NCBI RefSeq assembly: GCF_001194135.2
Contig: NC_068988.1
Location: forward strand, 7,863,583-7,899,399
Direction of reading: 5' to 3'
Length of the DNA stretch: 35,817 nucleotides
Origin: Octopus bimaculoides
Lineage: Eukaryota
How positions within the stretch are numbered: position 1 is the first letter of the stretch; every line of letters begins with the position of its first letter. A program made the translations under genes and the position numbers. Positions 5,080 to 6,125 of this stretch are shown piece after piece. Under the pieces are notes generated by a model. That model saw nothing but the letters and a program-made list of their open reading frames with translations. It searched no databases and was not told where the DNA came from.

Positions 5080-5322
5080 CAAATTAAAATGTGTTCTAAG
5101 AGGGAAGAAGCCCCGTAGGTAACCAAAAACAGTTTGGAACAAAAATATTCCTGAATATAAATTCATGCCACAGTAACGCAAGTTGTTTTTCCAGGAACAC
5201 GATGACCTTGTAAAAATTCTAGCCATTTTTTTCAGCAACCGGAACTGCATAACGGAAGTATTGAATTTATCTAAATTTATATATATCTTAAATAACTAGC
5301 ATCATTCAAGTAATGCCATATT

Positions 5323-5462
5323 CCTTTCTACTCTAGTTACAAGGCCCGAAATTTCTTTTTGGAGGGGGAGAGCAGTCGATTAGATGGACCCAAGTACGTA
5401 ATTGGCACTTAATTTATCGACCCCGAAAGGATGAAAGGATGAAAGGCCTGCTTGCCGCCTTT
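5323..5462 (-). mobile_element. SINE family A, internally deleted, tail type 1
   Basis: Head remnant aaggcggcaagcagg joins directly to core cctttcatcc(tttcatcc)tttcggggtcgataaattaagt; tail ...cttgtaactagagtagaaagg. Confidence 0.85.
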
Positions 5463-5479
5463 CAAGTAATCTTTTCTTA

Positions 5480-5710
5480 TTTCTTTATTGCCCACAAGGG
5501 GCTAAACATACAGGGGACAAACAAGGACAGACAAAGGGATTAAGTCGATTACACCGACCCCAGTGCGTAACTGGTACTTAATTCATCGACCCCGAAAGGA
5601 AGAAAGGCAAAGTCGACCTCGGCGGAATCTGAACTCAGAATGTAACGGCAGACGAAATACTGCTAAGCATTTCGCCCGACATACTAATGTTGCTGCCAGC
5701 TAGCCGCCTT
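5480..5710 (-). mobile_element. SINE family A, full length, tail type 2
   Basis: Minus strand: aaggcggctagctggcagcaac (A-box-like), gagttcagattc (B-box-like), core cctttcttcctttcggggtcgatgaattaagtaccag, tail ...gtttagccccttgtgggcaataaagaa. Confidence 0.92.
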
Positions 5711-5723
5711 TTTTTTTCTTTGT

Positions 5724-5841
5724 GCTTACAGCACCTAGGTTTCCCAAGCGGTCACCCATCTAAGTACTAACTAGGCTCGATGTTGCTTAACTTCGGTGAT
5801 CAGACGAGAACCAATGCTTTCAACGTGATATGGCCGTAAGC
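5724..5841 (-). pseudogene. 5S rRNA retropseudogene (full-length 5S copy with A-rich 3' linker)
   Basis: Minus strand reads GCTTACGGCCATATCACGTTGAAAGCATTGGTTCTCGTCTGATCACCGAAGTTAAGCAACATCGAGCCTAGTTAGTACTTAGATGGGTGACCGCTTGGGAAACCTAGGTGCTGTAAGC (118 nt). This is a typical metazoan 5S sequence with terminal helix GCTTACGGC/GCTGTAAGC and box A and box C motifs. It is a single copy followed by A-rich sequence instead of an oligo-T terminator, with apparent CpG-type decay. Confidence 0.93.
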
Positions 5842-5855
5842 CATATCAAGTAATA

Positions 5856-6069
5856 TTTTCTACTCTGGGGCACAAGACCCGAAATTTTTTGATAAGGGGG
5901 CCAGGCTATTAGATCAACTGGTACGCAACTGGTACTTAATATATCGACCCAGAAAGGATGAAAAGCAAAGTCGATTTCGCCGGAATTTGAACTTAGATCT
6001 TAAAGACAGACGAAATACCGCTAAGCATTTCACCCGACGTGCTAACGTTTCTGCCAGCTCACCGCCCTT
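5856..6069 (-). mobile_element. SINE family A, full length, tail type 1
   Basis: Head aagggcggtgagctggcagaaacgttagc, B-box-like aagttcaaattc, core cttttcatcctttctgggtcgatatattaagtaccag, tail ...tcttgtgccccagagtagaaaat. Confidence 0.92.
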
Positions 6070-6125
6070 CAAGTAATGGCATATTGAAAATGAATGAAAC
6101 CTATTATAATAATTATTATGTAGTT

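What the first reader, a model, noticed from the sequence alone, without database searches (positions are those of the whole stretch)
5305..6085. One target site hit repeatedly: stack of three SINEs and a 5S copy punctuated by the same TCAAGTAAT motif
Seen: an 18-bp direct repeat TTCAAGTAATG(C/G)CATATT brackets the whole cluster (5305-5322 and 6068-6085). Its core TCAAGTAAT recurs at both internal junctions (5462-5470 and 5846-5854). All four inserts are Pol III-type, share one orientation, and have no intervening host DNA. Known: TPRT creates TSDs. Inference: either serial re-insertion at a regenerated target, with the second-strand cut always landing at the previous element's 5' end, or one RT making several template jumps. 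Either way this looks like a sequence-specific landing pad for Pol III RNAs.
Basis: partly seen in the sequence, partly recalled or inferred. Interest (0 to 1): 0.75.

Follow-up and report, generated by a model that had tools for sequence, protein, structure and literature searches.

The report
Three SINE insertions stacked at one site
A short AT-rich site in this probably octopus genome was hit three separate times by SINE retroposons, one dragging along a 5S rRNA copy, each hit leaving one more copy of the target sequence; this is a tidy example of a known insertion hot-spot effect, not a new landing-pad system.

Summary
TCAAGTAAT occurs four times in the window, all at element boundaries in 5305-6085. 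A 17/18 direct repeat brackets the stack. Every insert lies on the minus strand: three tRNA-derived SINEs and one full-length 5S rRNA copy.

The motif is not part of the SINEs. None of six other copies in the window carries it, so it is duplicated target DNA.

Four copies of the target mean three duplication events. The nesting fixes SINE1, with its 18-bp TSD, as the first insertion. SINE3 and a 5S-plus-SINE2 unit followed, each with a 9-10-bp TSD. No target copy separates 5S from SINE2, so they probably entered together as a template-switch or ligation chimera.

Re-use has an ordinary cause. These SINEs end in (ATT)n tails, and both nick sites begin with AAT or ATT. SINEs cluster throughout the window (P about 0.001). 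A TSD also regenerates the target after each insertion.

A landing pad specific for Pol III RNAs is not supported. I found no report of this for cephalopods, but the kind is known: SINE hot spots with overlapping TSDs, and chimeric retrocopies.

Empty-site and genome-wide tests remain undone.

The parts
6068..6085 (-). Left (5') copy of SINE1's 18-bp target-site duplication. It reads AATATGCCATTACTTGAA in element orientation. Its last 9-10 nt also serve as the left TSD of SINE3.
   Evidence: 17/18 match to 5305-5322 (D8). Coordinates.
5855..6067 (-). SINE3: a full-length tRNA-derived SINE with the type-A 3' module, ending ...CCAGAGTAGAAAAT.
   Evidence: nhmmer 1.1e-66, profile positions 2-222; alignment; 11.6% from a crude consensus.
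5846..5854 (-). Internal target copy ATTACTTGA: the right TSD of SINE3 and the left TSD of the 5S-SINE2 unit.
   Evidence: Exact motif match, directly after the SINE3 tail.
5842..5845 (-). Four extra nucleotides (TATG) at the 5' junction of the 5S copy, belonging neither to the target nor to an element.
   Evidence: Read from the sequence. Interpreted as junction filler; this is inference.
5723..5841 (-). Full-length 5S rRNA retrocopy. It starts at G1, ends at the mature 3' end, and has no T-run terminator.
   Evidence: Rfam RF00001, 105.7 bits, model 1-120, with alignment.
5711..5722 (-). A-rich linker CAAAGAAAAAAA between the 5S 3' end and the SINE2 5' end. No target copy is present here.
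   Evidence: Sequence. The motif is absent between 5471 and 5845.
5471..5710 (-). SINE2: a full-length SINE of the same head and core but with the type-B 3' module, ending ...GGGCAATAAAGAAATAAGAAAAG.
   Evidence: nhmmer 5.7e-67. The type-B module is shared with 34993-35100 at 89% identity. Alignment.
5462..5470 (-). Internal target copy ATTACTTGA(A): the right TSD of the 5S-SINE2 unit, abutting SINE1's 5' end.
   Evidence: Exact motif match; coordinates.
5323..5461 (-). SINE1: a type-A SINE keeping its first ~13 nt (AAGGCGGCAAGCAGG), with an internal deletion of about 85 nt. It ends ...AGAGTAGAAAGG and is the oldest insert by the nesting logic.
   Evidence: nhmmer 1.2e-30 for profile positions 105-225. 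The alignment shows head plus deletion.
5305..5322 (-). Right (3') copy of SINE1's 18-bp TSD, AATATGGCATTACTTGAA.
   Evidence: D8.
34899..35280 (+). Comparison case in the same window. A type-B SINE (34911-35100) is fused directly to a 5'-truncated type-A SINE (35101-35268). One perfect 12-bp TSD, TAGAACCACCTG (34899-34910 and 35269-35280), flanks both, and there is no internal target copy.

Best explanation
Three successive target-primed reverse transcription (TPRT) insertions used one short AT-rich target. In element orientation the empty site read ...CATTCATTTTC-AATATGSC-ATTACTTGAA-TGATGC...

Event 1 inserted SINE1 and duplicated 18 bp (AATATGSCATTACTTGAA).

Events 2 and 3, in unknown order, inserted SINE3 and a 5S-linker-SINE2 unit. 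Each went into an upstream copy of the target. The first-strand priming point was just before ATTACTTGA, and the second-strand nick was again just after ACTTGA(A). Each event therefore added one 9-10-bp target copy and pushed SINE1's left TSD outwards.

The 5S copy and SINE2 entered together. Either the reverse transcriptase reached the 5' end of the SINE2 RNA and jumped to the 3' end of an oligo-adenylated 5S rRNA, or the two RNAs were ligated beforehand.

The site was re-used for three reasons. A TSD regenerates the target intact. Both priming points begin with AAT or ATT, the repeat unit of these SINEs' (ATT)n tails, so the nicked DNA can pair with the RNA tail. The partner LINE endonuclease, probably of the RTE clade, likes this context.

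Shown: the anatomy, the locus-specific nature of the motif, the count of target copies, the nesting order, and the SINE clustering. Inferred: the TPRT mechanism, the partner LINE, tail pairing, and the template switch.
For: (1) The motif is target DNA, not element DNA. It occurs only at these four places. None of six other SINE copies in the window carries ACTTGA after its tail or before its head. It follows two different 3' modules (type A and type B) and also precedes the 5S copy, which has no SINE end there.

(2) Counting. Each TPRT event adds one target copy. Four copies of ATTACTTGA mean three events for four inserts, and the only joint lacking a copy is 5S/SINE2.

(3) Nesting. The AATATGSC half of the 18-mer exists only at the two outer ends (D8). 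SINE1 therefore inserted first and the others went into its left TSD. No other order reproduces the sequence.

(4) The inserts are not duplicates of one another. SINE2 has a different 3' module, SINE3 and SINE2 are 83% identical, and SINE1 carries a deletion.

(5) Tail and target. Other copies end in (ATT)n or (TTA)n, and three or four of them have ATT/GTT runs on both sides, although perfect ATT/AAT runs cover only 2.0% of the window. The two priming points here start AAT-ATG and ATT-ACT.

(6) SINEs sit next to SINEs generally. Three of 12 neighbour gaps are 60 bp or less, against 0.31 expected (P about 0.001).

(7) A true single-TSD chimera of two SINEs lies at 34899-35280. It shows that fusion events occur with these elements and that they leave no internal target copy.

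(8) Literature. RTE-clade LINEs are expressed and apparently active in octopus (PMC9115989, PMC13282606). RTE elements end in microsatellite-like repeats (PMC2887409). RTE-clade TSDs start about 10 nt downstream of a T-run (PMC13295347), and here TTTT lies 10-13 nt upstream of the A of ATTACTTGA. CanSINEs show hot spots with overlapping TSDs and tandem arrays (PMC4084570). Chimeras of 5S, U6 or SINE RNAs made by LINE reverse transcriptases, including tripartite ones, are documented (PMC2104539; bioRxiv 10.1101/2025.02.02.635956). RNA ligation is an alternative route (PMC6789731).
Against: No empty or intermediate allele was seen, because no octopus genome or read data could be reached. Independence of the three events therefore rests on anatomy alone.

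Divergence from a crude nine-copy consensus (12.5, 9.1 and 11.6%) does not resolve an age order.

The four 9-mers are still identical although the SINEs differ about 10% from consensus. That is mildly surprising, though explicable by subfamily differences and the motif's lack of CpG.

The nucleotide before each TSD is C, not the T typical of the published RTE signature.

The partner LINE was not identified, and there is no LINE sequence in the window.

The 12-nt A-rich linker and the 4 extra nt at the 5S junction are explained only ad hoc.

The window comes from a gapped short-read-style assembly with 11 N runs, and the joints could not be checked against reads.
Confidence: 0.72

Rival explanations
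1. A single TPRT event in which one reverse transcriptase copied SINE1, SINE2, 5S and SINE3 RNAs in turn. The 18-bp repeat would be the only true TSD.
For: One 17/18 repeat brackets everything. All parts share one orientation. Multi-part chimeras exist (PMC2104539), and one two-part example lies in this window.
Against: Template jumps between RNAs cannot create the two internal copies of locus-specific target DNA at 5462-5470 and 5846-5854. The bona fide chimera at 34899-35280 has none. The reverse transcriptase would have had to return to the target DNA and copy the same 9 nt twice, switching back to an RNA each time.
Confidence: 0.06
2. Four independent insertions. The 5S retrocopy inserted on its own, for example through a poly(A)-dependent L1/Tx1-type LINE, exactly at SINE2's 5' end and with little or no TSD.
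For: The 5S copy carries an A-rich 3' extension (5711-5722). L1-Tx1 families are reported as recently active in Octopus vulgaris (PMC13282606). The sequence at SINE2's 5' boundary (TTGAAAGG) resembles a T-run/A-run nick site on the other strand.
Against: No direct repeat flanks the 5S copy alone. The insertion would have to fall precisely on SINE2's first nucleotide. A fusion event explains the same facts with one step fewer.
Confidence: 0.12
3. The 5S-linker-SINE2 unit is an ordinary copy of an existing 5S-headed composite SINE family, so event 2 was a normal SINE insertion.
For: An automated annotation of O. vulgaris lists a '5S' SINE class (PMC13282606). 5S-headed SINEs built on tRNA-SINE bodies are known in other animals (cited in PMC10886601). 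No Pol III terminator separates 5S from SINE2.
Against: This is the only 5S sequence in the window. The 5S part is complete to its mature 3' end and is followed by an A-run, which looks like a captured RNA rather than a trimmed SINE head. Copy number could not be tested.
Confidence: 0.08
4. ATTACTTGA belongs to the elements as a shared LINE-derived 3' end. The leftmost 18-mer would then be an orphan tail fragment, not a TSD.
For: All three SINEs in the stack are followed by the motif.
Against: None of the six other SINE copies has it. It follows two unrelated 3' modules. The AATATGSC part is also duplicated. An 18-nt tail-only insertion would be required at the left end.
Confidence: 0.03
5. 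Assembly artefact: alternative alleles or paralogous SINE loci were joined in tandem by the assembler.
For: The window is a gapped draft with 11 N runs. SINE-rich regions are hard to assemble.
Against: The stack lies inside one gap-free stretch (3801-7978). The joints share only 9 bp, far below assembler k-mer sizes. The nested TSD pattern is biologically coherent.
Confidence: 0.03

Closest known systems
SINE insertion hot spots with overlapping TSDs and tandem arrays (CanSINEs in Felidae, PMC4084570; the SINE hot spots in the rodent mys element, Cantrell et al. 2001, cited there)
   Same: Several independent SINE insertions share a few base pairs of target, have overlapping TSDs, and build head-to-tail arrays.
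   Different: Here all events are stacked in one genome, so the history is read from nested TSDs rather than from a species comparison. The same second-strand nick position appears to have been used three times. The elements have (ATT)n tails and are probably RTE-mobilised, whereas CanSINEs are mobilised by L1 and carry poly(A). I found no report for cephalopods in four literature searches.
Chimeric retrocopies made by LINE reverse transcriptase template switching or by prior RNA ligation (U6/L1 and 5S/L1 in mammals; WEIRD/Mg-SINE/MGL in Magnaporthe: PMC2104539, PMC6789731, bioRxiv 10.1101/2025.02.02.635956)
   Same: A full-length small Pol III RNA (5S) is fused in the same orientation to the 5' end of a retroposon copy, and the pair is flanked by one TSD.
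   Different: The 3' partner is a full-length SINE, not a truncated LINE. A 12-nt A-rich linker separates the parts. In human 5S/L1 chimeras the 5S part is usually truncated and antisense, whereas here it is complete and sense.
RTE-clade LINE/SINE integration signature (Tn-TA) and microsatellite-like 3' ends (PMC13295347, PMC2887409)
   Same: The SINE tails are short tandem repeats. The TSDs are about 9-18 bp. A T-run lies about 10 nt upstream of the TSD start. The TSD starts with A.
   Different: The base before the TSD is C, not T. This is a single site, so it is compatible with the signature but not a test of it. Unlike Bov-B, the octopus copies are often flanked by target sequence resembling the tail repeat.
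5S rRNA-derived SINEs (the SINE3 class)
   Same: The 5S sequence, with its internal-promoter region, lies upstream of a tRNA-SINE body and LINE-type tail, with no terminator between them.
   Different: There is no evidence that this unit has ever been copied. The 5S part is a whole rRNA with an A-tail, not a trimmed head.

Membership tests
5S rRNA (Rfam RF00001) | Sequence and secondary structure score above the family's gathering threshold over the full length | tested here: met
   105.7 bits against 38, model positions 1-120, only two non-canonical pairs.
Functional 5S rRNA gene | A Pol III terminator (T-run) directly after the 3' end, and genomic spacer context | tested here: not met
   The 3' end is followed by CAAAGAAAAAAA and then SINE2. 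The next TTTT on that strand is about 500 nt downstream, near 5215. It is a retrocopy.
tRNA-derived SINE | A 5' head with Pol III A and B boxes derived from a tRNA | tested here: inconclusive
   By eye there is a B-box-like GAGTTCAAATTCC and an A-box-like TGGCAGAATCG in the consensus. ARAGORN and Rfam find no tRNA.
tRNA-derived SINE | A short, dispersed, repeated element with defined ends and flanking TSDs | tested here: met
   16 profile hits in the window, common 5' start AAGGCGG, and TSDs of 9-18 bp.
SINE superfamily with a conserved central domain (Deu / Nin-DC type, recalled from memory only) | A central block shared with SINEs of distant hosts while heads and tails differ | tested here: met
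   27 copies aligned from the 33 metagenome contigs form an unrelated ~300-nt SINE that shares only the ~33-nt block GCCTTTCATCCTTTCGGGGTCGATAAATTAAGTA. Which named domain this is was not tested.
RTE-mobilised SINE | 3' end shared with an RTE-clade LINE of the same genome | not testable with these tools
   There is no LINE sequence in the window and no octopus genome on hand. Only the microsatellite-type (ATT)n tail and the literature (PMC9115989, PMC2887409) point this way.
Independent multiple insertions at one hot spot | Nested or overlapping TSDs, with one extra target copy per event | tested here: met
   Four copies of ATTACTTGA and two of AATATGSC, in an order consistent with nesting.
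Independent multiple insertions at one hot spot | Intermediate or empty states in relatives or other individuals | not testable with these tools
Two ORF look-ups and one protein search found nothing.
Template-switch or ligation chimeric retrocopy (5S-SINE2) | Two RNA copies in the same orientation, joined without target sequence, with one TSD around both | tested here: met
   There is no motif between 5471 and 5845, and ATTACTTGA lies on both sides of the pair. The 12-nt A-rich linker is atypical.
Sequence-specific (site-specific) retroelement target | Genome-wide enrichment of the motif at element junctions | not tested
   There are no other occurrences of the motif in the window and no other SINE junction carrying it. 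Genome-wide data were unavailable.

The most novel reading that the evidence does not exclude
Two readings remain possible. (a) The site is a true sequence-determined hot spot, where the partner LINE endonuclease cuts the same two phosphodiester bonds every time. That would be quasi-site-specific integration by an otherwise dispersed, RTE-type machinery. (b) The 5S-linker-SINE2 fusion has an intact 5S internal-promoter region, no terminator before the SINE body, and a mobilisable tail. It could be a newborn 5S-headed SINE caught at its origin.
Probability: 0.1. Interest if true: 0.6.

Novelty: new member of a known kind. Interest (0 to 1): 0.3.

Why it matters
The stack records retroposon integration in a cephalopod in a form that can be read directly. 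The nested TSDs give the order of events and the positions of both nicks for three separate integrations. The 5S-SINE joint and the second chimera at 34.9-35.3 kb show that the reverse transcriptase mobilising octopus SINEs fuses RNAs, which is how new SINE types arise. If genome-wide analysis confirmed the preference for tail-like AAT/ATT targets and for precise re-cutting, two things would follow. It would explain why SINEs, 11.6% of the O. vulgaris genome (PMC13282606), pile up in clusters and seed ATT microsatellites. It would also extend the RTE insertion signature to molluscs. As a single locus, though, it is an illustration and not a discovery of a new mechanism.

Tried and rejected
There is no read support, copy-number profile or allele check.

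2. Orthologous or other copies through proteins. The look-up of encoding contigs with two ORFs spanning the right junction and flank found nothing. The search for homologous proteins with the 88-aa junction ORF also found nothing.

3. DNA pattern scans. The SINE head 23-mer gave no hits in viral contigs or genome contigs. The core pattern in metagenome contigs gave 33 contigs, but they hold a different SINE family of another host sharing only about 33 nt. They are useless for octopus target statistics.

4. tRNA origin of the head. ARAGORN and Rfam, down to E = 10, found nothing.

5. Age ordering by divergence from a nine-copy consensus did not resolve.

6. Secondary structure of the empty site as a cause of the hot spot. 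The DNA fold is -2.9 kcal/mol with z = -0.66, which is not significant. The TTCAA...TTGAA near-palindrome seen by eye is not supported.

7. Tandem duplication of one unit is rejected. The three SINEs differ in 3' module, in deletions, and by about 17% in sequence.

8. The resemblance of TATG+GC at the 5S junction to ATATGGC in the TSD was considered as a remnant of the target. No serial scheme reproduces it, so it is left as junction filler.

9. Rough expectation, which is inference. Take about 1.6 million SINEs: 11.6% of about 2.8 Gb (both from PMC13282606), at about 200 bp each (my assumption from the copies here). Under uniform targeting a triple hit on the same bond is expected about 0.02 times per genome. 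If only about 1% of positions are acceptable, the expectation rises to a few hundred. A moderate target preference is therefore enough, and no dedicated landing pad is needed.

Full report
**What is there**

Exact TCAAGTAAT occurs at 5306, 5462, 5846 and 6069 and nowhere else on either strand of the window. The expected count for the whole window is 0.71. With one mismatch allowed there is no excess. The 18-mers at 5305-5322 and 6068-6085 agree at 17 of 18 positions.

Everything in between lies on the minus strand. Read in element orientation, from 6085 down to 5305, the layout is:

- AATATGCC-ATTACTTGAA
- SINE3 (6067-5855)
- ATTACTTGA
- TATG
- 5S rRNA (5841-5723)
- CAAAGAAAAAAA
- SINE2 (5710-5471)
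- ATTACTTGA(A)
- SINE1 (5461-5323)
- AATATGGC-ATTACTTGAA

The 5S copy is full length and scores 105.7 bits in Rfam. It has no terminator, so it is a retrocopy and not a gene.

**The SINEs**

A profile built from the window's copies finds 16 hits. They share a head that starts AAGGCGGCGAGCTGGCAGAA and a core containing TTTCATCCTTTCGGGGTCGATAAATTAAGTACCAG. They carry one of two 3' modules:

- Type A ends ...TTTCGGGCCTTGTGCCCAGAGTAGAAA followed by (ATT)n.
- Type B ends ...TTTAGCCCCTTGTGGGCAATAAAGAAATA(G).

SINE3 and SINE1 are type A and SINE2 is type B. SINE1 keeps about 13 nt of head and then has an internal deletion of about 85 nt. ARAGORN and Rfam do not recognise the head as a tRNA, although A-box-like and B-box-like motifs are visible.

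A scan of metagenome contigs with the core found 33 contigs. They carry an unrelated ~300-nt SINE of some other host that shares only about 33 nt of core. The core is therefore one of the conserved SINE central domains. From memory it resembles the Deu/Nin-DC type; this was not tested.

**Is the motif element or target?**

None of the other six copies in the window has ACTTGA after its tail or before its head. In the stack the motif follows both type-A and type-B tails and also precedes the 5S copy. It is therefore locus DNA, meaning duplicated target. The immediate flanks (5090-5304 and 6086-6640) are unique in the window.

**Reading the history**

Each target-primed insertion adds exactly one copy of its target. 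Four copies of ATTACTTGA therefore mean three events, yet there are four inserts. The only joint without a target copy is 5S/SINE2.

The AATATGSC half of the 18-mer exists only at the two outer ends. SINE1 must therefore have inserted first, with an 18-bp TSD. SINE3 and the 5S-SINE2 unit then entered upstream copies of the target, each with a 9-10-bp TSD. Their relative order cannot be told. No other order reproduces the sequence.

Divergence from a crude consensus (12.5, 9.1 and 11.6%) neither supports nor contradicts this order.

That follows automatically. The left TSD copy keeps the same top-strand nick site, and that site now abuts the earlier element.

**The 5S-SINE2 joint**

The 5S copy is complete from G1 to its mature 3' end. 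It carries a 12-nt A-rich extension and runs straight into the first nucleotide of a full-length SINE2. The pair is flanked by ATTACTTGA on both sides.

This is the architecture of chimeric retrocopies made by LINE reverse transcriptases, either by end-to-end template jumping or after RNA ligation (PMC2104539, PMC6789731, bioRxiv 10.1101/2025.02.02.635956).

The same window holds an independent two-SINE chimera. At 34899-35280 a type-B SINE is fused directly to a 5'-truncated type-A SINE inside one perfect 12-bp TSD. That case shows such fusions occur with these elements and leave no internal target copy. It also shows why a single event with several jumps cannot explain the whole stack.

Rivals for this joint cannot be excluded without genome-wide counts. 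They are an independent, TSD-less 5S insertion and a pre-existing 5S-headed SINE family.

**Why the same site three times**

Other copies end in (ATT)n or (TTA)n. Three or four of them have ATT/GTT runs on both sides, although perfect ATT/AAT runs cover only 2.0% of the window. SINE copies are also strongly clustered. Three of 12 neighbour gaps are 60 bp or less, against 0.31 expected (P about 0.001).

In the stack, the two first-strand priming points begin AAT-ATG and ATT-ACT, that is, with the tail unit. TTTT lies 10-13 nt upstream of the A of ATTACTTGA. This resembles the T-run-N10-A signature described for RTE-clade LINEs and their SINEs (PMC13295347), although the base before the TSD is C rather than T.

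RTE LINEs end in microsatellite-like repeats (PMC2887409). They are expressed and apparently active in octopus (PMC9115989, PMC13282606).

The simplest account combines three things: an ordinary target preference of the partner LINE, pairing between the RNA tail and the nicked target, and the fact that a TSD regenerates the target. A rough calculation supports this. A triple hit is very unlikely under uniform targeting, at about 0.02 per genome. It becomes expected hundreds of times per genome if only about 1% of positions are acceptable.

Nothing indicates specificity for Pol III RNAs as such. SINEs are simply the dominant substrates here, and the 5S copy came in as a passenger.

**What could not be done**

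No octopus genome collection was available. Look-ups through ORFs and proteins found nothing.

The three decisive tests therefore remain open: empty or intermediate alleles, genome-wide target logos, and the copy number of the 5S-SINE2 joint. A fold of the empty site showed no significant structure.

**Verdict**

Serial re-insertion holds for three events, a template jump or ligation holds for one joint, and the sequence-specific landing pad for Pol III RNAs is unsupported.

The phenomenon belongs to known kinds: SINE hot spots with overlapping TSDs and tandem arrays (PMC4084570), and chimeric retrocopies. It occurs here with (ATT)n-tailed, probably RTE-mobilised SINEs of a cephalopod, for which my literature searches found no report. 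Interest is modest.

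Noticed in passing
window 34899-35280 (+): A type-B SINE with an internal deletion (34911-35100) is fused directly to a 5'-truncated type-A SINE (35101-35268). One perfect 12-bp TSD, TAGAACCACCTG, flanks both. It looks like a template-switch chimera of two SINE RNAs.
   Followed up: partly
window 27107-27606, 29075-29559, 18692-18876: SINE copies lie head-to-head or tail-to-tail inside ATT/GTT microsatellites, with ATT runs on both sides. 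Either SINE tails seed these microsatellites or the SINEs target them. Overall SINE clustering has P about 0.001.
   Followed up: partly
window 11743-12207 (-), perhaps extending to 12485: This ORF encodes a fragment of a DDE_3 transposase (Pfam PF13358, E = 7e-9). It is probably a decayed Tc1/mariner-type DNA transposon.
   Followed up: partly
L001-L033 (JGI metagenome contigs, e.g. Ga0209363, Ga0209780): Contigs filed as metagenomic carry a ~300-nt tRNA-derived SINE of an unidentified animal host. It shares only a ~33-nt core (GCCTTTCATCCTTTCGGGGTCGATAAATTAAGTA) with the window's SINEs. The copy in L007 ends in (ATT)n.
   Followed up: partly
L017 502-551 (-): One copy of that foreign SINE contains a 50-nt stretch 82% identical to positions 42-91 of the window's 5S copy, between its tRNA-like head and the shared core. 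No Rfam family reaches its gathering score on this contig.
   Followed up: no
window 5026-5089: A ~64-nt fragment of another dispersed repeat has relatives at about 33279, 21020, 23733 and 31459. It lies 215 bp from the stack and is otherwise unrelated to it.
   Followed up: no
window 6126-6192: A short tandem array of a 17-nt unit (CACTGCCAAGAATCGAA) lies 40 bp beyond the left TSD copy.
   Followed up: no
window 5834-5848 versus 5307-5315: The four filler bases plus the first two 5S bases (ATATGGC in element orientation) repeat seven bases of the nearby TSD (AATATGGC). This may be a templated filler insertion at the 5' junction, or it may be chance.
   Followed up: partly
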